Part shown: positions 48,510 to 63,517 of the stretch, piece after piece | Layout of the letters: every line of letters starts with the position of its first letter | Position numbering within the stretch: position 1 is the first letter of the stretch | Notes under the pieces: generated by a model | The model's input: the letters and a program-made list of their open reading frames with translations, nothing else | What the model was told of the DNA's origin: nothing | Databases searched by the model: none | Program-made: the position numbers and the translations under genes | Source of the DNA: Salpingoeca rosetta | Lineage: Eukaryota > Protista > Choanoflagellata | Reading direction: 5' to 3' | Assembly (NCBI GenBank): GCA_033442325.1 | Contig: JAWQFM010000018.1 | Location: forward strand, 330,536 to 394,535 | Length of the DNA stretch: 64,000 bases

Positions 48510-49002
48510 ATGGCGACGCCAGTGTGGATGATGTTGTCGACGCTGCTGTTGTTGTTGGCAGCCTCGGACAATGCCGCTGTTCTTGCTGGTCAACCGGAAT
48601 GCACCATCATCAAGGGTCCGTTGTGCCAGGTTGAGGGTGCCAGTGTGCATGAGGGTGTGCGAGGGTGCTTTGAGATAAGGCAAGCAGTGTGTTGTTTGTT
48701 TTGTGGTCTGTGTGCCGTCTTGTTTTGTTTTGGTGTTGTTTGCTGTCCGCACAATGGACATGGGGGTGTCCGTACGTTGAGCTGACACACGTGTGTCGTA
48801 CGCGTTGCTGTACAGATTACGGCTGCTTTGTGGACACACTGAAGCCGCGCACGCTCCCGCAGAAGGCCGACAACGCCTACTCGTGCGTTTGTGCTCGCAT
48901 GCTCGTGTGTGCTCGTGTATGTGTGTGTGGCTGTCTGTGTGTGTGCTTGTGTGCTTGTGTGCTTGTGTGCTTGTGCGTGTTTGCATGTGTGTGCGTGTGT
49001 GC

Positions 49003-49034
<32 letters not shown>

Positions 49035-49556
49035 TACATGTTGTTGTTGTCGTTTGGCTCTATCGTGCATGGCACTGTGCTTGTCCAGCCCAACTTCTTC
49101 ACACGCTGCTGCAACGCATGGTACAGGTACAAAGAATGTGCCGCAAACTGCTTCAGCCTCGGGTTTACGGGCACTGCCGGTGCAGAGGGCGGAGAGGAGT
49201 GCTGGTGCTCAAACGAGAGTGGACCCGTTGGTGGCAGCGCACCCCAATGTAAGCGAGAATGTGTGCGCACGTTGTGTTGTGTATGCGTGGGTTGTGTTGT
49301 GTATGCGTGGGTTGTGTTGTGTATGCGTGCGTTGTATGTGTATCTGTCTCCCCATCTGTCTGCCTGTCTGTCCGTGTCACGAACATGTCTTCGGTCTACG
49401 CTTCTCACACCGCCATCCACTCGTCAGCCGAGTGTGACAAGACATGCAGGGACGACAGCACGCAGGAGTGCGGTGGCCTCTCACGTTTGAGCCAGTTCAG
49501 CTTCAAGTGCACGTCTGGCCAGAAGTTTTACTCTTGCTCAGGTATGTGCGTGTTGC

Positions 49557-49600
<44 letters not shown>

Positions 49601-50330
49601 CGTACATGTGTGGACACCTGTGTGTGTGTTTGTGTGTCGTGGCGTGTGCGTAGACTGTGTGTGGTTGTGTGTTTACAGCTGCTCACATCATGCACACCGG
49701 TGTCGTCTGCTGCAGGCGGCAAGTGTGTTGAGGACCCCCAGGGTCCCTGGAGTCACCCCAACTGCAACGGCCAATGCAAGGCACCGCCACCGCCACCAAC
49801 AACCACGACGACGGCCACCCCATACACCACCCCACACCCTCGGACAACAGCACAGCCGCTGACCTGCGAAATTGTGAACGGTGGGTGTCATTCCATTGTC
49901 ACACCAGTGCCATCGCAATACCATCGCCATGCAACACCAACGTGTCCGTCATCACGCGCCCCATTTTGCGACACGCTTTGATCCGCGTGGTGCTGTGACG
50001 TGTTCGTACCGGCTGCAACGACAGATTGGCCTTGACTGCTGCTCACTGCCTCTCCTTATCTCTCGCACATATATGTATGTGTGTGTATGTGTGTGTGCGT
50101 GTATGTGTGTGTGCGATTGTCCACTTGCTGGGTGTACTCCAAGATTACGGCTGCTTTGTGGACACACTGAAGCCGCGCACGCTCCCGCAGAAGGCCGACA
50201 ACGCCTACTCGTGCGTTTGTGCTCGCATGCTCGTGTGTGCTCGTGTATGTGTGTGTGGCTGTCTGTGTGTGTGCTTGTGTGCTTGTGTGCTTGTGTGCTT
50301 GTGCGTGTTTGCATGTGTGTGCGTGTGTGC

Positions 50331-50362
<32 letters not shown>

Positions 50363-50895
50363 TACATGTTGTTGTTGTCGTTTGGCTCTATCGTGCATGG
50401 CACTGTGCTTGTCCAGCCCAACTTCTTCACACGCTGCTGCAACGCATGGTACAGGTACAAAGAATGTGCCGCAAACTGCTTCAGCCTCGGGTTTACGGGC
50501 ACTGCCGGTGCAGAGGGCGGAGAGGAGTGCTGGTGCTCAAACGAGAGTGGACCCGTTGGTGGCAGCGCACCCCAATGTAAGCGAGAATGTGTGCGCACGT
50601 TGTGTTGTGTATGCGTGGGTTGTGTTGTGTATGCGTGGGTTGTGTTGTGTATGCGTGCGTTGTATGTGTATCTGTCTCCCCATCTGTCTGCCTGTCTGTC
50701 CGTGNNNNNNNNNNNNNNNNNNNNNNNNNNNNNNNNNNNNNNNNNNNNNNNNNNNNNNNNNNNNNNNNNNNNNNNNNNNNNNNNNNNNNNNNNNNNNNNN
50801 NNNNGGAGTGTCGGGCCCTATCATTTTGAGCCAGTTCAGCTTCAAGTGCACGTCTGGCCAGAAGTTTTACTCTTGCTCAGGTATGTGCGTGTTGC

Positions 50896-50939
<44 letters not shown>

Positions 50940-51842
50940 CGTACATGTGTGGACACCTGTGTGTGTGTTTGTGTGTCGTGGCGTGTGCGTAGACTGTGTG
51001 TGGTTGTGTGTTTACAGCTGCTCACATCATGCACACCGGTGTCGTCTGCTGCAGGCGGCAAGTGTGTTGAGGACCCCCAGGGTCCCTGGAGTCACCCCAA
51101 CTGCAACGGCCAATGCAAGGCACCGCCACCGCCACCAACAACCACGACGACGGCCACCCCATACACCACCCCACACCCTCGGACAACAGCACAGCCGCTG
51201 ACCTGCGAAATTGTGAACGGTGGGTGTCATTCCATTGTCACACCAGTGCCATCGCAATACCATCGCCATGCAACACCAACGTGTCCGTCATCACGCGCCC
51301 CATTTTGCGACACGCTTTGATCCGCGTGGTGCTGTGACGTGTTCGTACCGGCTGCAACGACAGATTGGCCTTGACTGCTGCTCACTGCCTCTCCTTACCT
51401 CTCCTTATCTCTTGCACATGTGTGTGTGTGTATGTGTGTGTGCGTGTATGTGTGTGTGCGATTGTCCACTTGCTGGGTGTACTCCAAGATTACGGCTGCT
51501 TTGTGGACACACTGAAGCCGCGCACGCTCCCGCAGAAGGCCGACAACGCCTACTCGTGCGTTTGTGCGCACGTGCTGGAGTGCATGTGCATGTGTGTGCA
51601 TGTGTGTGTGTGGTGTTGTCACAAGACATGTGTGAGCAAAGGCCCCGCCGCCCTCAGTATTTGTACCGCTCTGGCTTGTTTGTTTCATTCAATTCGCTGC
51701 TCAGGTACCAGGAGTGTGCCGCAAACTGCTACGTGCTCGGGTACATCGGCACTGCTGGCATTGAGAACGGCGAGGAGTGTTGGTGCTCAAGTGAGAGCAG
51801 CTCTGTTGGTGATATTGCACCCCAATGTAAGTCACAAATGCA

Positions 51843-51881
<39 letters not shown>

Positions 51882-52125
51882 ACCTTCGTATGTGGCACGA
51901 ACATATCTTTGGGCTTGTCTTCTCACATGCGTATCCCATCAACAGCCGATTGTTTCAGGCCATGTAGGGACAACAGCACACAGGAATGTGGTGGTCGCTC
52001 TCGCTTGAACGAGTTCAGTTTCAAGTGTGCGTCTCATCAGAAATACTACTCTTGCACAGGTATGTGTGTGGGTGTGTGTGCGTGTGTGTGAGTGTGTGCT
52101 GTAATGGTGTACATGTGTGGACACG

Positions 52126-52210
<85 letters not shown>

Positions 52211-52965
52211 CTTCTCATATCTTCGCGTCCTGGGTGGCTCACACCGGTATATTGTGCTGTAGGCCGCAAGTGTGTTGAAGATCCCCAGGGCCCCTGGAGC
52301 GACCCCAACTGCAACGGTGCATGCACGGTACCAACGCCGTTCCCGCCGCCAATCACAACCACGACCACTTCGACCACACCACACACTACAACAACAGTCC
52401 CGACCAATACAACCACGACCACTACCACTTCAACAACAGCCACGACGACCGCCCCACACACCCCTACACACGCTCCGACCCCACAGTCCCTGACCTGCGA
52501 GATTGTGAACGGTGGGTGTCATTCCAATGCCACACCCATGCCAACGCTGTGACCTGTTCACATGGGCTGCAACGATAGATTGGCCTTGGCTGCAGCTCAC
52601 TGCCTTTTTCACTCGTGCGCCTGTGTTGTTGTTGTGCTCCAAGATTACGGCTGCTATGTGGACACCCTGAAGCCACGCACGCTTCCATACAAGACCGACA
52701 ATGCTTACTCGTGCGTTTATGCATGCCTACTTGAGGAGTGCGTGTGTGCGTGTTGTCGTTTGGCTCTGTCGTGCATGGCACTGTGCTTGTCCAGCCCCAC
52801 TTGTTCACACGCTGCTGCAACACATGGCACAGGCTCAAGGAATGTGCCGCACGCTGCTACGAACTTGGGCATATCGGCACTGCCGGCGTTGAGAACGGCG
52901 AGGAATGCTGGTGCTCAGACGCGAGTGGACCCGTTGGTGCTACCGCCCCCAAATGTAAGTCACGA

Positions 52966-53017
<52 letters not shown>

Positions 53018-54237
53018 CTGCCTGCCTGTGTGCGTGGTGGCTGAAAGACGACTTCCGCCTGTTCTTCTCACATGCATATCCCACCAACAGCCAAGTGTGA
53101 CAAGACATGCTGGGATGACAACACGCAGAAGTGTGGTGGCCTGTCTCGCTTGAGCGAGTTCAGTTTCAAGTGCACGTCTGGTCAACAGTTTTACTCTTGT
53201 GCAGGTATGTTTGTGCGTGTTGCATTGTGTGCGTGCGTGCGTGCATGTGTGTGTGTGTGTGTCGTGTGTGTGCTTGTGTGCGTGCATTGTGTGCGTGTGT
53301 GTGTGCGCGCGTGCATTGTGTGCGTTGTGTCTGTGTGTGTGTCGTGTCGTGTCGTGTGCGTAGACTGTGTGTGGTTTTGTGTTTACAGCTGCTCACAACT
53401 CGCGTCCTGAGTGGTGTCGTCTGCTGCAGGCGGCAAGTGCGTCGAGGATCCCCAGGGTCCCTGGAGTGACTCCAACTGCGGTGGCGCATGCACGGCACCG
53501 CCATCCCCGCCATCACCACCCGGCCCATCGCCGCCTGCTCCCCCTGGTCCATCACCACCATCGACAACACCAGAGCCCCTGACCTGCAAAATTGTGAACG
53601 GTGGGTGTCTTTCCAATGTCACACCCATGCCAACGCTATGACCTGTTCACATGGGCTGCAGATTGGCTGTGACCGCTGCTCACTGCTTCTCATTTATCTC
53701 TTGCATACGTATGCGTGTGCCCATCGTGTTGCTGTACTCCAAGATTACGGCTGCCACGTGGACACCAAGACACCACGCACTCTTCCGCAGAAGGCTGGGT
53801 TTGCATCCTCGTACGTTCGCGTGTGTGCGCACGCGTGCGCGTACATCGAATACATACGTGTGTGCACGTTCACTGTCACATTCCTATATCTGTATACATT
53901 GACACACGAGGGCTGCCTTTATTGCCTGTTCCTCACAGCCCTGTTCCCTGACATCACATGCGTCCTCCACCCCTCTTGCCACTTCCCACCCCTCCTTTTG
54001 TTTTCCATGCTCCTTCCACACAGCCATCAGGAGTGTGCTGCAAACTGCTACAGGCTGGGCTTCACGGGCACCGCTGGCGTGGAGAAGGGCGAGCACTGCT
54101 GGTGCTCAGACGAATTCGGTCCTGTCGGTGCAGCTGCTGCCACATGTCAGTCAAGAGAGAGAGAGTGTGTGTGTGTGTGTGTGTGTGTGCGTTTGTGTGT
54201 GTGTGTGTATGTGCGTTTGTGTGTGTGTGTGTGTGTG

Positions 54238-54278
<41 letters not shown>

Positions 54279-55689
54279 CTGTTCCTGTGCCTGTGCGTAC
54301 GTTGATGAATGAGTGGGTAGTCGAGTGAGTGGACTATTGAGGTTCTGAGTAAGAACGAGTGCAATTGCCTCGTGTCTCATGTGTGATTTGAAGGTCGCCC
54401 TTCCGAGCTCAGCACTGCAATTCCTTGTTACCACCTCCTGTCGAATTAACCACACTGAACCAACCAACCCACCGAACCAACAGCCGAGTGCGACCGACGC
54501 TGCCAAGATCGTCCCTCCTCCCAGCGCTGTGGTGGCAATTCTCGCCTGAGCGAATTCGCTTTCCAGTGCACACCCGGTCGCAAGTTCTACTCATGCGCAG
54601 GTGTGTCATTGCATTGTTTGCTTGTTTGCTTGTTTGCTTGTTTGTGTGTGTGAGAGTGTGTGTTTGTTTGTTTGTTTGTTTGTTTGTTTGTTTGTTTGTG
54701 TTTGTTTGTTTGTTTGTTTGTTTGTTTGTTTGTTTGTTTGTTTGTTTGTTTGTTTTTTTGTTTGCATGTGACGCTTGCACTTGATTGGGATTGTTCAAGG
54801 GCAGGACGAGTCTTCCTGTTTCAGCACAGCTTAAACCATGCCAACTTATCATGTCTTGATAACACCCACGACCGTGCGTGTTTCATGTTGGTTCAAGCCT
54901 CTTATTGCGTGGAGGATCCCCACGGCCCCTGGAGTGACCCCGACTGCGGTGGCGCATGCAAGGCACCATCACCAACACCGCCACCGCCACCAACCACGAC
55001 GACCACCCCAGTGCCTACCACTCCATCGCCACCATCCCCCTCCATGCACTGCACCATCCTTATGGGTACGGGTGGGCTGTTGACGTGACCCTCGCACGCG
55101 CTCACCCACAACACACATGTATCCACGCTTTGTTGGTTCTCTCTGTTTTCCCTTGTATTCCTTCATCCTTCATCACACCATGCTCGTGCACGCAATCCAT
55201 GCTGTCACACCCGTGTTTGCTCGTGACTAGACTTCGGCTGTTTCAAGGAGACGTTCACGCCACGCACCCTCCCCCACTACGCTGGTCCTGTGAAGTCGTG
55301 AGTTCATGCACGCGAGCCAGTTTGAGCTGTCCATCGGGTGACATCTTCGTTGCCGCCCTCGCTTGATAAATCTCAATTCTGTCTCCTCACCCAATGTGCA
55401 CTGACATGAATGCACACACGTGCATTTATTTGACTCACTCGCTTTCACACACACGCACGCGTACATGTGTACACATGCACATACATCCATGTACGCACAC
55501 AATCTCGTGCATTCACGCACATTCACACACACACACGTGCATAGGACTGTTGAGTGCGCGTCTGCCTGCTTTGACTTGAAGTTCAACGGCACTGCCGGTG
55601 TCGAGAACGGCACGCAGTGCTGGTGCTCAGACACATATGCGCCCCTCGGCCCACCTCTACCTTCAGGTACACCACGTGCTTCGTTTGTG

Positions 55690-55775
<86 letters not shown>

Positions 55776-56058
55776 ACGCCAGTTTGGACGCAAGTACTCA
55801 CTGCAATGCTTGCCCTCCCCTCTTGCGTGTTTGTGTTGATGCCATCTGCGCCACAATGAATGCACAGCATCCTGCTCCAAGCGGTGCAAAGGTGACCGTG
55901 CCCACCACTGCGGCGGGCCTGCCAGCATCAACGAGTTTGCATTCAAGTGCTCATCCAAGCAGTTCCACTACAGCTGCTCTCGTAGGTTGCTGCGCGCTTT
56001 CACATGCGACATGCGCGGTTGTGTGAGCACACGTGTGTGTGCGTGTGTGAGCACACAC

Positions 56059-56114
<56 letters not shown>

Positions 56115-56402
56115 CTGCGTTGTGGCTAGTGCTGTGGCTGTTGTACTCCTGCCCATGGAATCTTGTACACGGCCCAGTGGGCTGCGAAACATTGCATTGC
56201 GCACCACCTTGCACTGTCTTCTGTGCTCCTCACGATCGAAGCTGTGCTGTCCATTCCAACCGATACCCAGTTGGGCGGTGCGTGGCCGACCCCACGGGCC
56301 CTTTCATCACCTCAGATTGCAACGGCAAGTGCAATGCGGCTGTAGCTGCAGCACCGCTCCGGTCACAGCCACGCTTCACGTGCCGAGGTCAGCACCGCGC
56401 GT

Positions 56403-56481
<79 letters not shown>

Positions 56482-56732
56482 TGCTTATGTCTGTGTCTGT
56501 GTGTTCGTTTCGTCCTGTGCTGTCCTGTGTTGTTGTCCTTGTCTGTGTGCTTGTTTGGCTGTGCGCCTCGTGGTTGAGCGTATTGCTTGTACGCCACAAC
56601 TTGTTGACACACCCCTCCTCTCGCCTACCATCGTTGCACACTTCAGGCCGCCAGTGCGTGGAGGATGCAGACGGCGAGTACGCGTCGTTCAATTGCGACC
56701 ACGCATGCGATCCAACCTTCCTCGAGACCTGA
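48510..56732 (+). CDS. Secreted tandem WSC-domain (carbohydrate-binding) protein: 6 units with Pro/Thr mucin-like linkers
   Basis: Signal exon 48510-48615. Each unit reads 'DYGCFVD...RTLP...S|YKECAANC...G..GTAG.E.GEECWCS...|[19 protein letters not shown]' (WSC consensus), then a 4-Cys module and a P/T linker. Ends 'CDPTFLET*' with no TM. Confidence 0.88.
48816..56400 (+). repeat. Tandem array of six 4-exon WSC modules (starts 48816, 50144, 51489, 52644, 53744, 55231; ~1.1-1.5 kb period)
   Basis: Repeated exons and recognisably homologous introns. Units 1 and 2 are near-identical; unit 6 is the most diverged. Confidence 0.92.
50705..50804. other. Assembly gap (100 N) inside WSC unit 2
   Basis: Run of N. 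Confidence 1.
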
Positions 56733-57316
56733 CGCCGCAACCATTCACTGCATCCATCTTTTGTTACAACTGTTTTCCTGCTTCCTTTCGCTGTTACACC
56801 GATGCGTTTCTCCTCTCAGCGGAGTGCTTGCTGCTGTGACGAGGACTGCTGCCGCGTTGTTGTTCCCCTGCTGCGTGGTGGTCGCATACGTTGTTGTTCC
56901 AACACAAGAACCCATCCCACGCAACTGCTCTTGTTTCCTTCTTGGAAGATCCTTCAATCCCACGCTGCAACAAAACAAAAAAAAATCACCAAAAAAAATA
57001 TGCGCCTTGCTTGGGCCCGTACCACCGTGTTCGCATGACTCACGTCCCCCTCATTCGCCCTCATTCCCCTCTCCTCCAACGCAAACAACAGCAAGCACAA
57101 CACAGAGCGGCAGTGACAAGGTGGTGTTCTGTGGTCTTGTTTGTTTGTGTGTGAGTAGGTGAGGAGGCTTGCAATGGCATGACGCACGCTGCAGCAAGGG
57201 ACTGTGCGGTCTGTGCAGTTGTGTGCATTCGGGCATGGTTGTGCTCACCCCTGCGTTCTGTTTGGTCTTGACGCTCATTTGCACCGATCATTACCTGCGT
57301 TGTTGCAGTCAGCAAA

Positions 57317-57425
57317 ATGAGGCTCCTCTTCGTGGCACTTGCCGTGCTACTGGCAGCGAACAACATTGCTGCCGATGGCACCGAATGCACCATCGTCAAC
57401 GGTGTGTGTGTGTGTGTGTGTGTCT

Positions 57426-57491
<66 letters not shown>

Positions 57492-57816
57492 GTGCGTGTG
57501 TGCGTGTGTGTGATGTTATGGGGGATGAACGCTTTCCTTGCACTCGTGCATGCGTTTGTGTGTGCGTGGTGCATGTTCATGTCCTTTCTTGTGTGTTGTG
57601 GTCCAACACCTGTCCTCACGCATGTCCCTGGGTGTGGCGTGCTCATGTTCAGATTATGGCTGCTTTGTGGACACCCTGAAGCCGCGCACGCTTCCGCAGA
57701 AGGCCGACAACGCCTACTCGTGCGTTTGTGCGCACGTGCTGGAGTGCATGTGCATGTGTGTGTGTGTCTGTCTGTCTGTCTGTCTGTCCATCTGTGTTTG
57801 TGTCTGGCTGGCTGTA

Positions 57817-57851
<35 letters not shown>

Positions 57852-58915
57852 GTGTGCGTGTGTCTCTGTGTTACATGTTATCGTTGCCATTCTCCTTAGT
57901 CGTGCATGGCACTGTGTTTGTCCAGCCCCCCCCCCTCTTCACACACTGCTGCAACGCATGGTGCAGGTACAAGGAATGTGCCGCAAACTGCTACGGGCTC
58001 GGATTCACAGGCACAGCTGGTGCAGAGAATGGCGAGGAGTGCTGGTGCTCAAACGAGAGTGGACCCGTTGGTGCCAGCGCACCCCAATGTAAGCCACGAA
58101 TGTATGCGTGTGCATGCGTGCGCGTAACGTTCTTGGTGTCGGCGTGGGTTGTGTTGTGTGTGCGTGGGTTGTGTTGTGTATGCGTGTGTTGTGTTGTGTT
58201 GTGTTGTGTTGTGTTGTCTGCCTGTCTTTCTGCCTGTCTGTACCTGGTACTAACATGCCTTAATGCCTCCCGTCTGCTCTTCTCACACCGCCATCCACTT
58301 AACAGCCGAGTGTGACAAGACATGCAGGGACGACAGCACGCAGGAGTGCGGTGGCCTCTCACGTTTGAGCCAGTTCAGCTTCCAGTGCACATCCGGCCAG
58401 AAGTTTTACTCTTGCTCAGGTCTATGCACATACCCTGCCAGCTCTTGTATCTGCCTTGCCCATCCCGCGTCTCCTCGCCTCTGCCCTCCTTTGCTCAAAC
58501 CAATCCTTCCATTGTGTTCCCGATAACGTTTCCGATCGCCAACGCAACCACTAACGCCGTGCCTTCACCACATCCTGCGTCCTTCTCCTGTCACAACGAT
58601 ACGATGACTTGTCTGTTCAAAGCAGGCGGTCTCTGCGTTGAAGATCCCCAGGGTCCCTGGAGTGACCCCAACTGCAACGGCGCATGCAAGGCACCGCCAT
58701 CCCCGCCATCACCACCCGGCCCATCGCCGCCTGCTCCCCCTGGTCCATCACCACCATCGCCACCGCCACCAGGCCCACCGGGCCCAACACCGCCACCATC
58801 CCCGCCATCTCCGCCATCCCCGCCATCTCCGCCATCCCCGCCCTCTGGCCACTCGAAGAAGAAGCTCGGCGCAGGCGACGTCATCGTCATCATGTGCGTG
58901 CGTGTGTGTGTCTCT

Positions 58916-58950
<35 letters not shown>

Positions 58951-59151
58951 GTGTGTGCATGTCATTGCTCGACAATCGATGCTGTCCTGCCCACTCCGCA
59001 TTTCACTGCCCCCATCTCACACGGCATGCGACACCTCCAACACGCTCACATATGTTTCACAGCTTCTTCGTCGGCATCATTTTCCCTTACTTCGTCCTGG
59101 GTGCCGTGTACATGAAATACGTCCGGGTACGTCCCGTATATGACACCTGCA

Positions 59152-59219
<68 letters not shown>

Positions 59220-59412
59220 CACACACACACACGCACGCACAACACAACTCACCCTCACATTCGCACACCACCGTGCTGTGCAGAATGCGTCTGGCGTTGA
59301 GGTTGTGCCCAACTACGAGTTCTGGGCGTCGCTGCCCGGCCTCATCTCGGACGGGTTCCGCTTTGTCATTGGAAAGGTCACCGGCCGCCCTCAGAGCTAC
59401 CAGGCCCTGTGA
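57317..59412 (+). CDS. Type I membrane protein: signal peptide, WSC, Pro/Ser stalk, Atg27/CD-M6PR-like TM and cytosolic tail
   Basis: 'MRLLFVALAVLLAANNIAA', one WSC module (57653-58690), an (SPP)n stalk, then 'KKKLGAGDVIVII|FFVGIIFPYFVLGAVYMKYVR|NASGVEVVPNYEFWASLPGLISDGFRFVIGKVTGRPQSYQAL*'. Confidence 0.88.
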
Positions 59413-60511
59413 TCCACCCCCGCTGTGCTCTCCACCCCTCCACCCTTTTCCATACAACCGCAGCCTCGTGGCAGGATGTGTGCTGACTTTGTTCAAAGTG
59501 GCTTCGCGCTTGGTGTTGCAATTCGCACTTGCGTCTCGAGAGTTGCCGTGCTGGTTGCATCACCACCTGTCCCAGCATCAACGCTGGCCCACACTCCACT
59601 TTTGCTCTGAGTTCTTCCCTCTTCATCATACCCACCCTTGTCTCAAGTCTTGGTCACACCATGTCTGTCTCTTCCTCCACCGTACGTGAGTGAATGAATG
59701 TGTGTGTGTGTGTGTGCTTCGCGACGCGTACGTTCTCGCGTCCGGCCTCCGTCACACCTCTTCCTCTCCTTCGTAACCTCGCGCTTGGCCTCCCTCTCTC
59801 CATCATCGTCGTCTTCCATTGTCTTTCTCCTCTTCTTCACGTTAGAAGTTTCGTCGTGCGCAAGCACTCTGCTCTCCGTGGTGGGCGCGGCCTTCCGTTG
59901 TTCCCAGCTGCCGTCGTTTCGCGTCGTCTTGCTCATCGACCTTGGTGTTCTTTGTGGTTTCTTTTCCTCCAATCATCATCACCATCACCATCACCATCAC
60001 CATCACTATCACCATCACGGCAAACGTGCCCCCACACCACACTTCCGCTATTCCCCAGCAGTGCCCACTTGTTCCTTTTGTGACGAATACACGCCTCTCG
60101 TTTTGAAGCCGCAGCATGTGTGTGCGAATGTGTGTGAGCGTGACTGGGAGTGAGTACGTGTAACGAGAATGTTACACAGACTAAATGGTGATGTTGTGAC
60201 ATATTGTTATGTTGGTGATTTTTATTGTTTCGGGCACAGACACAACAATCAGCACAATCACACATCTTTTCTGGCGCTGTCCAACGCATGCGCACAACAC
60301 CCCACTTTGCACCGCCACCACCAAGAGCAGCAGTGGTAGCGGCGGTGGCGGTGACGTTGTTGGGCACGGACGCAGGACAACCTGTTGTTGACCTTGCATG
60401 ACGCACAAAGGAAGTTGGTTGGGAAAGGGGAGGGAGTGTGGAGAAAGCATAGATAAAGCGCACAAACAAAACAACTCGCTCGTATCCTAGACAGAACCAA
60501 GCAAACGCACG

Positions 60512-61279: not shown

Positions 61280-63517
61280 TGTGTGACAGCTGTTGCATCA
61301 GAGCTTGGTTCAGCTGTGACAGCATCTGACGCTGTGGCTGCTTCTGCTGCTGTTGCTGCTTGTCCTGATCCAGGCTGTTGTTGCGCGTGCGTGCTGACNN
61401 NNNNNNNNNNNNNNNNNNNNNNNNNNNNNNNNNNNNNNNNNNNNNNNNNNNNNNNNNNNNNNNNNNNNNNNNNNNNNNNNNNNNNNNNNNNNNNNNNNCC
61501 AGCTGCTCCTCCTCCTGCTGCTGCTGCGCTGACGCGGGAGCTGAGTGGCACGTGCGGCAGTCGACGCTGACGATCTGATGATGCTGCTGTGTCTTCACGG
61601 GAGGTGACGCTGAATGGAGCAACGCACAACGCAAGGGTACGCAATGTGAGTGAAGGAACAATAACATACGCGCACACAAGACCACACAAGACACACACAC
61701 GCACACACACACACGCACACACACAGCCCCATGCATGCACGAACATACTCCCAATTGCAATGCTCACCTCCCGGCTGCTGCAGAGGGCCGCTGGCGGCAA
61801 GAGCGGGTACTGCCCGTTCATGCTCATCCACCATACGAACCCGGCGTATCAGCCGCTCGGTCATCCTTGCAGCCGATGCCGCTGTTGTCCGTGCCTCCAC
61901 CGAGGGTTGCACTGGATGGACCAAGCAACGCACACCACAGCACAAGAGCAGTGAGCACACGTGTCAAGTGTGAACTCAGACAGGAGAAAAACTGACACAC
62001 GAAACCAGGAACACGTGCACAATTATATTGTTACGACACACACACACGCACACACACACACACGCACACACACGCACGCACACATACAACCACACAGCAG
62101 CGCACACCTCGCGTTCGCGGTGGAGGGGTGAAGATCTCGGGGCCAAGCGGCTGGCCATGCTGGTCGACAGAGTTTCCAACACCCACGAACGGCTCCACGC
62201 ACAAGCAGAACTCATCAATAATCTTCGCAATGGCGTCCTCCCCACCAGGCAGCACGCCCCTCCGATCTGCAAGCACAGGGTCCGCCCCGAGCGTCAGCAG
62301 CAGGGCGACAAGATCTCGGTCCTTCATCTTGCACGCCCACGTCAGCGCGTTGCAGCCTGCGTCGTCCACAGTGGCCACAAGAATGTCGGGCTGCTGCACA
62401 ACAGCATCCACGAGCCTGTGCACCGCAGACATGCGCTCCCCGCCACTCGTGCCCGCAATGCTCGTCACGGCGCTAATGTCAGGGGTGTCAGCATCGATGC
62501 GGGCGCGATTGCGGACGTGGGCCACGTCTTCTGCTGCCGTAGACACCATGCGCCTGTTCCTCTGCTTGCGCAGTGCTCGCAGCAGCTTGCCCACACGCTT
62601 CCCAAGCTGCCGCAGCCACCCCTGGGTAGCGTCGTGTGCCCTCACCGTGGACCGCATGCACGCCCGCCGTGCCTCATGCACGATGGCTGCAACAATGACG
62701 GGCACTGTGCGCCACGCCATCTGAAGTTGCGTGCAGACGGCGCCGTCGCCACGATCATTCGGCACATCCCCCATGCTGCTCAGCTCAGTGCGCACAAGCG
62801 CAACAATGCGGTATGTGGACGGCACAGCACGGCGGGAACCACTGCGCCGCGCCTTGGGTGGGGCTTGCACGCATGCAAACTTGTGCGGGACGTACACCCC
62901 CTGCAGCAACTCGCGGCGAACCGCCGTCAGCTGCGCTGCGAGCGACGCAGGGGGGCCAGCCAACACCACCAGCGGCATGTGAAGACGCGGCACAGCTACC
63001 ACCAAGTCGCAGGCAAACCGTGCACCATCACCAAGGTCGGCGCACGCAACGTGCACCTCGCCGATGTACTCGCTGCCACCACCACGACCACCACCATGGA
63101 TGATGCTGCTGTTCCCATCACCAACACGGCGAAGGAAGCAGGCGGGCCTGAAGTTGCTGCTGTCGATGTGGCTGTGGTCGTCGTCAGGGCTGTTGGCGCT
63201 CAGGGGGCGAATGGTGACAGCAACAATGGGGCAATACAAGGTGTCGCCCCACTTTTCCATCTGCTGCACCTCTGCATCTTCCATGAGAACTGATGACTCA
63301 ATGGCCACCGCCACGTGCGTGCACGCAACGAAGGTGTCGATGACGTCCTGCGGAACCGCACACTCCTTCTCGTTGGACAGCCTCAGATTCTCCATACGCG
63401 CGTCCGTGATGGACACCACGCGTATGTCCATCGTGCCTGCGAAGGGTCAAACGCCACAGCAGCCGAGCCAAAGTGAGCGACAAGAGGGCAGCGGATTGCC
63501 GGGGTGAAGATGGCTCT

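What the first reader, a model, noticed from the sequence alone, without database searches (positions are those of the whole stretch)
57317..59412. WSC lectin domain joined to an Atg27/mannose-6-phosphate-receptor sorting tail
Seen: signal peptide, WSC module, proline stalk, TM and the tail 'YFVLGAVY.KYVRNASGVEVVPNYEFWASLPGLISDGFRF...YQAL'. Known: this TM/tail signature (G.E..PN..FW..LP.L..DG..F plus a C-terminal YxxPhi) is typical of CD-M6PR/Atg27 proteins, which normally carry a luminal MRH domain. WSC domains bind carbohydrates such as beta-glucans. Inference: the MRH was replaced by a WSC, giving a glycan-capture receptor that cycles to endosomes/lysosomes. It could act in prey or particle recognition, or in cargo sorting.
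Basis: partly seen in the sequence, partly recalled or inferred. Interest (0 to 1): 0.85.

Follow-up and report, generated by a model that had tools for sequence, protein, structure and literature searches.

The report
WSC receptor with MPR/Atg27 sorting tail
A choanoflagellate (Salpingoeca rosetta) expresses a small membrane protein that joins a sugar-binding-type WSC domain to the membrane anchor and cytosolic sorting tail of mannose-6-phosphate-receptor/Atg27 proteins; this domain combination has not been described, is conserved in a second genus, and suggests a receptor that shuttles to endosomes or lysosomes.

Summary
Window 57317-59412 (+) holds a seven-exon, GT..AG-spliced gene for a 282-aa type I membrane protein. 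Its parts are a signal peptide, one WSC domain (eight Cys plus a CGG motif), a 4-Cys module, a 53-residue Pro/Ser stalk, a TM helix and a 46-residue cytosolic tail ending in YQAL. Stranded RNA-seq supports every junction, including WSC-stalk exon to TM exon to tail exon. The tail exon alone matches the C-terminal ends of Pfam ATG27 (E 8e-6) and Man-6-P_recep (E 1e-4). A profile of 82 canonical MRH-bearing relatives matches residues 201-281 at 108 bits and finds nothing in the ectodomain. A full-length orthologue in Hartaetosiga balthica (52% identical) passes the Pfam cut-offs for WSC, ATG27 (tail part only) and Man-6-P_recep. The organism is Salpingoeca rosetta. The same tail also sits on its two canonical Atg27/MPR-like genes and on at least two genes with other ectodomains, so it behaves as a portable module. 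The gene lies just downstream of a paralogue with six WSC modules, no TM segment found and no such tail. The function, a glycan-binding receptor cycling through endosomes and lysosomes, is inferred and untested. This is a new variant of known kinds, of moderate to high interest.

The parts
57077..57120 (+). 5'UTR exon. The 3' end is firm and the 5' end approximate. It contains an in-frame TGA at 57114-57116.
   Evidence: RNA-seq joint 57118/57307 (cut +2 gives intron 57121-57308, GT..AG), 8+23 reads and one contig; sequence read.
57309..57401 (+). Exon 1: 8 nt of 5'UTR, ATG at 57317, signal peptide (aa 1-19), and the first luminal Cys (C24) in an ECTIVN motif.
   Evidence: It is homologous to the signal-peptide exon of the upstream paralogue at 48512-48615.
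57653..58364 (+). WSC domain, aa 29-111, spread over exons 2-4 (57653-57719, 57967-58088, 58306-58419). It has eight Cys (C32, 55, 59, 76, 78, 94, 98, 106) and the CGG motif at 106-108.
   Evidence: Exon 3 alone hits Pfam WSC at E 1.4e-4, profile positions 28-63/82. It is 72% identical to the WSC of orthologue P0075, which scores 43 bits over positions 2-82/82. The Cys spacing equals that of ScWsc1 as given in PMC9024836.
58413..58687 (+). 4-Cys module (C-x4-C-x12-C-x3-C, aa 128-150), spanning the exon 4/5 junction.
   Evidence: It recurs after each WSC module of the upstream paralogue and in Choanoeca flexa proteins. It has no Pfam match. The AlphaFold model of the orthologue gives pLDDT about 95 here.
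58694..58852 (+). Pro/Ser-rich stalk, aa 153-205 (34 Pro, 11 Ser).
58853..59114 (+). Luminal juxtamembrane SKKKLGAG (aa 206-213) and TM helix (aa 214-236), covering the end of exon 5 and exon 6 (59063-59126).
   Evidence: Highest hydropathy window in the protein. The local canonical ATG27/MPR profile alignment starts at aa 201. The TM of the orthologue is modelled as a helix with pLDDT above 90.
59115..59412 (+). Cytosolic tail, aa 237-282 (end of exon 6 and exon 7, 59284-59412 including the stop). It carries the G-x-E-x-x-P-N-x-x-F-W-x-x-L-P-x-L-x-x-D-G-x-x-F motif, with FW at 59320-59325, and the C-terminal YQAL at 59398-59409.
   Evidence: Pfam ATG27 E 8.4e-6 (positions 223-256/261) and Man-6-P_recep E 1.4e-4 (positions 194-232/254) on exon 7 alone; 108.3 bits on the local canonical profile; 61% identical to the tail of S. 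rosetta PTSG_07762.
59413..59900 (+). 3'UTR. It reaches at least the end of the stretch that was laid.
   Evidence: Continuous stranded RNA depth of 60-180 up to 59900.
48512..56732 (+). Upstream tandem paralogue: a signal peptide plus six modules of WSC, 4-Cys module and Thr/Pro linker. No TM or ATG27-type tail was found. The end is approximate.
   Evidence: tblastn of the spliced protein against the window; start read; three-frame reading of 55150-57130. RNA reads from it cross-map as loose ends whose sequences lie at 49717, 49850, 51056, 51189 and 53564.

Best explanation
The locus encodes a 282-aa type I membrane protein of Salpingoeca rosetta. A Kremen/Wsc-type WSC (PAN/Apple-like) domain and a small 4-Cys module are held away from the membrane on a polyproline-like stalk of about 50 residues. 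They are anchored by the transmembrane helix and cytosolic tail that otherwise belong to single-MRH Atg27/cation-dependent-MPR-type receptors. Shown: the gene structure, its expression and splicing, the WSC identity, the absence of an MRH domain, the homology of residues 201-281 to Atg27/MPR TM-tails, and conservation of the whole architecture in Hartaetosiga balthica. Inferred: the tail works as it does in Atg27 and CD-MPR. On that reading, the C-terminal YxxPhi (YQAL-COOH) engages AP adaptor complexes for delivery to endosomes, lysosomes or food vacuoles, or for internalisation. The conserved juxtamembrane FW-containing segment, probably an amphipathic helix, mediates retrieval. The protein would then cycle between Golgi, endosomes/lysosomes and possibly the surface, while its luminal/extracellular WSC domain binds a glycan or glycoprotein ligand. 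It is thus best read as a non-M6P lectin-type sorting or uptake receptor, built by joining a WSC ectodomain from a locally expanded WSC gene family to a portable MPR/Atg27 sorting cassette.
For: Gene model: seven in-frame GT..AG exons. RNA-seq: every junction is supported, the signal is strand-specific, and an in-frame stop lies upstream of Met1. WSC: the exon 3 Pfam hit; eight Cys plus CGG with ScWsc1 spacing; orthologue P0075 scores 43 bits on WSC over the full model and matches the Kremen1 WSC structure 5FWW at E 4e-6. Tail: Pfam ATG27 and Man-6-P_recep hits on a 42-aa exon without TM residues; 108.3 bits for aa 201-281 against a profile of 82 MRH-bearing relatives, with no score for aa 1-200; the orthologue passes both Pfam cut-offs through its tail only, positions 181-259/261 and 154-218/254. 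The nearest tail in the same genome is that of PTSG_07762, annotated 'Autophagy-related protein 27' (61% identity; shared YFVLGAVY and EFWASLPGL). Conservation: P0075 is 52% identical end to end, all 14 luminal Cys are kept, and FW, DGF and the C-terminal YxxL are kept. Three environmental fragments (P0035, P0028, P0022) carry pieces of the same layout: a WSC C-terminal part (P0035 and P0028 only), the 4-Cys module, TM and tail. Tail biology in model systems: in yeast Atg27 the C-terminal YSAV directs AP-3 transport to the vacuole, and tail residues 222-237 are needed for Snx4-dependent retrieval (PMC5940307). The CD-MPR tail and TM keep that receptor out of lysosomes (PMC2120581). WSC domains bind beta-glucans or proteins in other contexts (PMC9024836).
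Against: No localisation, ligand or phenotype data exist for this protein. The ScWsc1 WSC structure shows no obvious glycan pocket (PMC9024836), and the Kremen WSC mediates protein contacts, so the ligand need not be a glycan. The tail lacks the acidic-cluster dileucine and the palmoylatable Cys of CD-MPR (from my own recall of the CD-MPR sequence, not tested here), so its itinerary may differ. The canonical profile was built from proteins chosen by similarity to a tail profile that included this tail, so its 108 bits are inflated. The independent evidence is the Pfam scores. The full 282-aa protein could not be submitted to Pfam, because a spliced product has no reference. The tail tree is unresolved, so the donor of the cassette is unknown.
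Confidence: 0.6

Rival explanations
1. The protein is a Wsc-type cell-surface sensor or adhesion protein. The overall layout copies fungal Wsc1-3 (signal peptide, WSC, extended glycosylated stalk, TM, short tail). It would probe the cell coat, theca or rosette matrix, or bind prey, at the plasma membrane. The Atg27/MPR-type tail would only set its endocytic turnover or polarised distribution.
For: The architecture is identical in outline to that described for ScWsc1-3 (PMC9024836). The stalk is rigid and Pro-rich. The neighbouring paralogue has six WSC modules, no TM segment found and mucin-like linkers, and looks like a matrix component.
Against: The entire tail is accounted for by homology to Atg27/MPR tails, whose described roles are intracellular sorting. 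No homology to fungal Wsc tails was seen. The stalk is Pro/Ser rather than Ser/Thr rich (1 Thr in 53 residues).
Confidence: 0.22
2. The protein is an Atg27-like membrane-traffic factor. Its TM and tail would do the work, for example accompanying Atg9-type vesicles or marking a lysosomal membrane pool, and the ectodomain would have little ligand function.
For: The TM-tail is closest to that of the S. rosetta protein annotated Atg27. In yeast the Atg27 tail is what drives its itinerary.
Against: The WSC domain is the best conserved part between the two orthologues (72% against 46-48% for TM and tail), and all 14 luminal Cys are kept. This argues for selection on the ectodomain. S. rosetta already has two canonical Atg27/MPR-like genes.
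Confidence: 0.12
3. The gene is an assembly or annotation artefact, or a non-functional chimeric gene produced by the local tandem duplication of WSC modules.
For: The region is repetitive: seven WSC modules, a 100-N gap at 50705, and microsatellite-filled introns. No matching S. rosetta protein of 107-451 aa was found in the protein databases.
Against: Copy-specific exon junctions are seen in raw RNA reads of two runs from one study, and in one contig run of another study. The reading frame is intact. An independent transcriptome of another genus encodes the same architecture.
Confidence: 0.03

Closest known systems
[quoted passage not shown]
   Same: Type I topology; a Lys-rich luminal juxtamembrane stretch; a TM with the YF-x-x-G-x-x-Y pattern; the cytosolic G-x-E-x-[IV]-P-N-x-x-F-W-x-x-L-P-x-L-x-x-D-G-x-x-F segment; and a YxxPhi at the extreme C-terminus.
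   Different: The luminal MRH (M6P-binding) domain that defines the family is absent and a WSC domain stands in its place. Two introns interrupt the TM-tail region here, but none does in the PTSG_07762 gene. There is no acidic dileucine signal.
Fungal Wsc1/2/3 cell-wall-integrity sensors
   Same: Signal peptide, N-terminal WSC domain with eight Cys and CGG, an extended low-complexity stalk, a single TM and a short cytoplasmic tail (PMC9024836).
   Different: The stalk is Pro/Ser rich rather than Ser/Thr rich. There is an extra 4-Cys module. The tail is homologous to Atg27/MPR tails rather than to the fungal signalling tail.
Kremen1/2 (animal Dickkopf co-receptors)
   Same: The closest solved WSC domain by sequence (orthologue P0075 against 5FWW, E 4e-6, including the Cys just upstream of the domain). 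Both are type I membrane proteins of holozoans.
   Different: Kremen has Kringle and CUB domains flanking the WSC and an unrelated tail. No Kringle or CUB domain is present here.
Hartaetosiga balthica EP00055_P003351 (P0075), an uncharacterised transcriptome protein
   Same: Full-length orthologue: 52% identity over aa 3-282, the same order of signal peptide, WSC, 4-Cys module, Pro/Ser/Thr stalk, TM and tail ending YSSL. Pfam gives WSC, ATG27 and Man-6-P_recep, all above cut-off.
   Different: Its stalk is shorter (258 aa in total). It has one extra Cys in the TM. It is known only as a predicted ORF without a description.

Membership tests
WSC domain (PF01822) | Match to the family profile | tested here: met
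   Exon 3 alone scores 22.5 bits, E 1.4e-4, on positions 28-63 of 82. This is below the 27.8-bit cut-off because only the middle third of the domain lies on that exon. The orthologue, 72% identical across the domain, scores 43 bits over positions 2-82. The whole spliced protein could not be submitted because it has no reference.
WSC domain (PF01822) | Eight conserved Cys (four disulfides) and the CGG motif | tested here: met
   C32, 55, 59, 76, 78, 94, 98, 106 give spacings 23-4-17-2-16-4-8. ScWsc1 (C27, 49, 53, 69, 71, 86, 90, 98) gives 22-4-16-2-15-4-8. CGG lies at 106-108.
WSC domain (PF01822) | PAN/Apple-like fold | tested here: inconclusive
   The AlphaFold model of the orthologue has pLDDT below 50 over much of the WSC region (shallow alignment that was partly misaligned), so no fold search was made. 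Sequence similarity to the Kremen1 WSC structure is E 4e-6.
Atg27 / CD-MPR family (PF09451, PF02157) | Luminal MRH domain | tested here: not met
   A profile of 82 canonical members gives no score for residues 1-200 (-3.5 bits). Pfam matches of the orthologue are confined to profile positions 181-259/261 and 154-218/254.
Atg27 / CD-MPR family (PF09451, PF02157) | TM helix followed by the conserved cytosolic FW-containing segment | tested here: met
   Exon 7: ATG27 26.3 bits (cut-off 27), E 8.4e-6; Man-6-P_recep 21.5 bits, E 1.4e-4. The local canonical profile gives 108.3 bits for aa 201-281. The orthologue scores 44.1 and 39.5 bits, both above cut-off.
Atg27 / CD-MPR family (PF09451, PF02157) | Tyrosine-based sorting signal at or near the C-terminus | tested here: met
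   YQAL followed by the stop codon. S. rosetta paralogues end YAQI, YGAL and YDSL, and the orthologue ends YSSL. Yeast Atg27 ends YSAV. Function as a signal was not tested.
Atg27 / CD-MPR family (PF09451, PF02157) | Binding of mannose-6-phosphate, or a role in Atg9 vesicle traffic | not testable with these tools
   This needs experiments. M6P binding is unlikely without an MRH domain.
Fungal Wsc-type sensors | Layout of signal peptide, WSC, extended stalk, TM and short tail | tested here: met
   compared with the description in PMC9024836.
Fungal Wsc-type sensors | Ser/Thr-rich stalk and a tail that signals to the cell-wall-integrity pathway | tested here: not met
   The stalk has 34 Pro, 11 Ser and 1 Thr in 53 residues. 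The tail is fully explained by homology to Atg27/MPR tails.

The most novel reading that the evidence does not exclude
The TM helix plus cytosolic tail of Atg27/CD-MPR proteins is an ancient, portable 'address label'. Choanoflagellates have moved it onto several unrelated ectodomains: a Kremen-like WSC domain (this gene and its Hartaetosiga orthologue), an APCDD1-like ectodomain (S. rosetta C3:437868; H. gracilis P0149) and a large unknown ectodomain (Choanoeca flexa P0027/P0098; S. rosetta C3:1943367). This would give a lineage-specific set of M6P-independent receptors that carry glycan or prey-derived ligands to endosomes, lysosomes or food vacuoles. The WSC member would be the first lectin-type lysosomal sorting or uptake receptor outside the MRH, sortilin and LIMP-2 classes in the closest relatives of animals.
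Probability: 0.35. Interest if true: 0.75.

Novelty: new variant of a known kind. Interest (0 to 1): 0.6.

Why it matters
Mannose-6-phosphate receptors and Atg27 are usually treated as one unit of MRH domain plus tail. A recent pan-eukaryotic survey even required an MRH domain to call an MPR (bioRxiv 10.64898/2026.10.22.760878), so proteins like this one are invisible to such screens. Here the TM-tail half is separable and has been reused on a WSC domain in two choanoflagellate genera. It has also been reused on other ectodomains in the same genomes. If the tail works as in yeast and mammals, this gives a simple way to study how sorting signals and ligand-binding domains were recombined before animals arose. 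S. rosetta is reported to be genetically tractable (from my own knowledge, not checked here), which would make the test feasible. It may also reveal a glycan receptor involved in feeding or matrix turnover. The WSC domain is closest to that of Kremen, an animal endocytic co-receptor, so the gene may bear on the ancestry of WSC-type receptors in holozoans. No S. rosetta protein matching this gene was found in the protein collections searched, so the gene model itself is a useful correction.

Tried and rejected
(1) I searched for the window's own protein by word-indexed search in three ways: the exon 3 frame (candidates 107-341 aa), the PTSG_07762 tail, which shares exact words with this one (102-324 aa), and orthologue P0075 (142-451 aa). 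None returned an S. rosetta WSC-tail protein. A longer, merged gene model cannot be excluded.

(2) The spliced 282-aa protein has no reference. It was therefore not typed into Pfam, structure, atlas or look-up tools. Single exons, the orthologue and local HMMER or BLAST were used instead.

(3) AlphaFold on the orthologue used a mixed alignment (A2) in which MAFFT misplaced the exon 4 fragments. The WSC region came out at pLDDT below 50, so no fold search was run.

(4) A maximum-likelihood tree of 155 TM-tail segments (75 columns) left 87 of 152 branches unresolved. This tail groups weakly (SH-aLRT 81) with environmental fragments P0022, P0026 and P0028 and does not group with P0075. The donor of the cassette cannot be named.

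(5) Pfam on open frames of the S. rosetta genes at C3:437868 and C3:1943367 gave nothing. Their ectodomains were identified only through tblastn with H. gracilis P0149, or not at all.

(6) The crinoid protein P0045 was first counted as a non-MRH carrier. It was then dropped, because the local profile gives a weak MRH-part match (14.8 bits).

(7) The ESM Atlas, earlier findings of this scan and a paper search for 'WSC domain' together with 'Atg27' returned nothing.

(8) Apparent SNPs and odd loose ends in the RNA reads (57675, 57693, 58074, 58383 and others; loose ends at 57652, 58420 and 58759) were considered as possible editing or alternative splicing. They were rejected because the loose-end sequences lie in the upstream paralogue, so they are cross-mapped paralogue reads.

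(9) I considered that the gene is the 3' end of the upstream multi-WSC gene. This was rejected: exon 1 has its own signal peptide and is spliced to a 5'UTR exon carrying an in-frame stop.

Full report
1. What is in the sequence.

Reading 56800-60000 and joining the open pieces at GT..AG borders gives seven coding exons on the + strand. They are 57317-57401, 57653-57719, 57967-58088, 58306-58419, 58626-58893, 59063-59126 and 59284-59412. They total 849 nt in frame and encode 282 aa. The introns are filled with (GT)n and (CA)n runs.

The product has these parts:
- a signal peptide, aa 1-19;
- a Cys-rich region with a WSC domain, aa 29-111;
- a 4-Cys module, aa 128-150;
- a 53-residue Pro/Ser stalk with 34 Pro;
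- a Lys-rich juxtamembrane stretch;
- one strongly hydrophobic segment, aa 214-236;
- a 46-residue tail with FW at 253-254 that ends YQAL-stop.

2. Is the gene real and spliced as proposed?

Two stranded raw-read RNA runs from one study, and contigs from two other studies, were laid on 57000-59900.
- Junctions 57719/57967, 58088/58306, 58419/58626 and 59126/59284 are each supported by tens to hundreds of reads.
- Exon 1 and exon 2 lie on one transcript contig.
- The exon 5 to exon 6 junction falls next to a skipped microsatellite. It is shown by 27+15 reads whose unaligned part before 59063 spells the last 30 nt of exon 5.
- A 5'UTR intron (57121-57308) is also seen. The spliced leader carries an in-frame TGA at 57114-57116, so translation starts at 57317.
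- Read orientation fits a + strand RNA.

Some reads showed other letters or foreign ends (57652, 58420, 58759). Those end sequences lie at 49717, 49850, 51056, 51189 and 53564. They are reads of the expressed upstream paralogue that cross-map onto this gene.

3. The two halves.

WSC half. Exon 3 alone matches Pfam WSC at E 1.4e-4, on profile positions 28-63 of 82. The eight Cys (32, 55, 59, 76, 78, 94, 98, 106) have almost the same spacing as C27, 49, 53, 69, 71, 86, 90, 98 of yeast Wsc1. The CGG motif follows the eighth Cys, as described for Wsc-like domains (PMC9024836).

Tail half. Exon 7 has 42 aa and no TM residues. It matches the C-terminal ends of Pfam ATG27 (E 8.4e-6, 26.3 bits against a cut-off of 27, positions 223-256/261) and Man-6-P_recep (E 1.4e-4, positions 194-232/254).

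I also built a profile from 82 MRH-bearing relatives, leaving out the S. rosetta Atg27-like protein P0001, its close relative P0002 and this protein. It aligns residues 201-281 to its positions 170-249 at 108.3 bits and gives no score to residues 1-200. That number is inflated, because the 82 proteins came from a search with a tail profile that included this tail. The Pfam scores are the independent evidence.

The first refutation condition, that the tail fails the ATG27/M6PR profiles, is not met either. There is no MRH domain.

4. Organism and relatives in the same genome.

The tail of a paralogue retrieved PTSG_07762 of Salpingoeca rosetta, annotated 'Autophagy-related protein 27' (P0001). 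This identifies the genome, which has 55.4 Mb in 68 contigs.

Six-frame searches of the genome with PF09451, PF02157 and the tail exon, followed by reading the loci, show that the TM-tail occurs in several genes:
- two canonical single-MRH genes (C21 = P0001, tail 61% identical to ours; C16 = P0003);
- a gene at C6 with an MRH-like end;
- the present WSC gene;
- a gene at C3:437868 whose ectodomain is homologous over most of its length to H. gracilis P0149, which carries Pfam APCDDC plus a tail-only ATG27 match;
- a gene at C3:1943367 with an unidentified ectodomain and a tail ending YDSL.

Multi-repeat CI-MPR-like genes are also present (C9, C23).

All the complete tails read here (C21, C3:437868, C3:1943367 and this gene) end in YxxPhi-stop.

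Intron positions in the TM-tail region differ between the genes. The C21 gene has none there and this gene has two. So this is not a recent copy of an exon.

5. Relatives elsewhere.

A profile of seven S. rosetta tails was searched against 1.84 billion representative proteins. It found 3334 proteins at E<=0.001.

Among the best 150, BLAST with the spliced protein picked out P0075, a complete 258-aa ORF from the Hartaetosiga balthica transcriptome (EukProt). It aligns to residues 3-282 at 52% identity.

Identity by region is WSC 72%, 4-Cys region 67%, TM 48% and tail 46%. All 14 luminal Cys, FW, DGF and the terminal YxxL are kept.

P0075 passes the Pfam cut-offs for WSC (43 bits, positions 2-82/82), ATG27 (44.1 bits, positions 181-259/261 only) and Man-6-P_recep (39.5 bits). 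Its WSC is most similar to the solved Kremen1 WSC (5FWW, E 4e-6).

Three environmental fragments show parts of the same layout. P0035 and P0028 carry a WSC C-terminal piece, the 4-Cys module, TM and tail. P0022 carries the 4-Cys module, TM and tail.

No other full-length orthologue of 142-451 aa was found. No S. rosetta protein for this locus appeared in any search.

Of the top hits with at least 100 residues before the TM region, 105 match the MRH part of the canonical profile and 7 match only the tail. The seven are this protein, P0075, P0098, P0149, P0046, P0064 and P0117. The cassette is therefore usually joined to MRH and occasionally to something else.

6. Local context.

Immediately upstream on the same strand lies a paralogous gene. 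It starts at 48512 with a homologous signal-peptide exon. It runs through six modules of WSC, 4-Cys module and Thr/Pro linker with the same exon pattern. It probably ends near 56732, without a TM segment and without an ATG27-type tail. The only tail match in the window is at 59064-59409.

The WSC half of our gene thus belongs to a local tandem family. It is at least as likely that a WSC gene gained the TM-tail as that an MPR lost its MRH. The tail tree cannot decide.

7. How it most likely works.

Shown: topology elements, domain identities, expression and conservation. Inferred: everything about traffic and ligand.

In yeast Atg27 the C-terminal YSAV binds AP-3 and sends the protein to the vacuole membrane. 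A 15-residue juxtamembrane stretch of the tail, including a Phe, is needed for Snx4-dependent retrieval, followed by retromer (PMC5940307).

In CD-MPR the tail together with the TM prevents delivery to lysosomes, and the receptor cycles between TGN, endosomes and the plasma membrane (PMC2120581).

The present tail keeps the conserved FW segment and a C-terminal YxxPhi. In the orthologue's AlphaFold model the FW segment is a confident helix after the TM (pLDDT 85-96).

I therefore read the protein as a cycling receptor of the Golgi-endosome-lysosome system, possibly with a surface pool. It would present a WSC domain about 15 nm from the membrane if the stalk is polyproline-II-like; that distance is my estimate.

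WSC domains bind beta-glucan in some fungal proteins and proteins in Kremen, and the yeast Wsc1 structure shows no clear sugar pocket. The ligand class is therefore open.

Rivals are a Wsc-like surface sensor whose tail only sets turnover, and an Atg27-like traffic factor whose ectodomain matters little. The second is weakened because the WSC is the most conserved part.

8. Comparison, novelty and verdict.

It is not a member of the MPR/Atg27 lectin family, because the defining MRH domain was tested and is absent. It shares that family's TM-tail module by homology.

It is a WSC-domain protein. It has the outline of fungal Wsc sensors but not their stalk chemistry or tail.

I found no paper that mentions WSC together with Atg27. 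A recent survey of MPRs required an MRH domain and so would not list it. The only prior trace is the automatic Pfam labelling of the Hartaetosiga ORF.

I rate it a new variant of known kinds, with interest 0.6. The architecture is certain and conserved, the organism is said to be experimentally tractable (from my own knowledge), and the portable-cassette idea is testable. The function remains inferred.

Noticed in passing
window 48512-56732 (+): A tandem paralogue lies directly upstream. It has a signal-peptide exon (ATG 48512) and six modules of WSC, 4-Cys module and Thr/Pro-rich linker, with the same exon pattern as the finding's gene. It probably ends near 56732 (...DPTFLET-stop). No TM segment or ATG27-type tail was found. 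It is expressed, since its reads cross-map onto the finding's gene. It looks like a secreted mucin-like multi-WSC protein. The gene model was not verified by RNA.
   Followed up: partly
window 48815-49783 and 50134-51122; N run at 50705-50804: The first two WSC modules of the upstream gene are near-identical copies (the same 30-mers occur at 49717/51056 and 49850/51189). They flank a 100-N assembly gap, so the number of modules may be mis-assembled. A second 100-N gap lies at 61399.
   Followed up: no
G000:C3:428000-438100 (L024, L003): An S. rosetta gene has a large ectodomain homologous to Hartaetosiga gracilis P0149 (885 aa; Pfam APCDDC, 40 bits). It ends in the same Atg27/MPR-type TM and tail (...IPHAEFWTSLPGLISDGF..., C-terminal YGAL). 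This looks like an APCDD1-like ectodomain on a sorting tail.
   Followed up: partly
G000:C3:1943300-1951800 (L006, L026): Another S. rosetta gene has this tail (best Man-6-P_recep hit in the genome, 33.9 bits; ends YDSL). Its ectodomain has no Pfam match. The tail shares the FWTQTLP variant with Choanoeca flexa P0027/P0098 (621/650 aa, unknown ectodomain followed by tandem 4-Cys modules).
   Followed up: partly
window 58413-58687 and after each upstream WSC module (e.g. 49709-49783, 52250-52324, 53420-53497, 54903-54965, 56273-56338): A small module, C-x4-C-x12-C-x3-C (consensus about [18 protein letters not shown]), recurs and has no Pfam match. It also occurs in tandem in Choanoeca flexa P0027/P0098 just before the TM. 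It is modelled with pLDDT about 95 in the orthologue. It may be an undescribed mini-domain.
   Followed up: partly
window 57077-57120: RNA or DNA contigs of two runs continue upstream of about 57077-57079 into sequences that occur nowhere in the 64-kb window (for example a 30-mer beginning CGATTCCGTT). Either a further 5' exon lies outside the window or the contigs are chimeric at a low-complexity stretch.
   Followed up: no
window 57317-59412: No S. rosetta protein corresponding to this gene was returned by three database searches covering 102-451 aa. The gene may be missing or merged in the public annotation.
   Followed up: partly
window 57403-57510, 57757-57860, 58895-58950, 59150-59235: Most introns of this gene (five of the seven, counting the 5'UTR intron) consist largely of (GT)n or (CA)n microsatellites, and another is rich in GTGTT-type repeats. 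The read-laying tool skipped these stretches, which hides reads across junctions 57401/57653 and 58893/59063.
   Followed up: no
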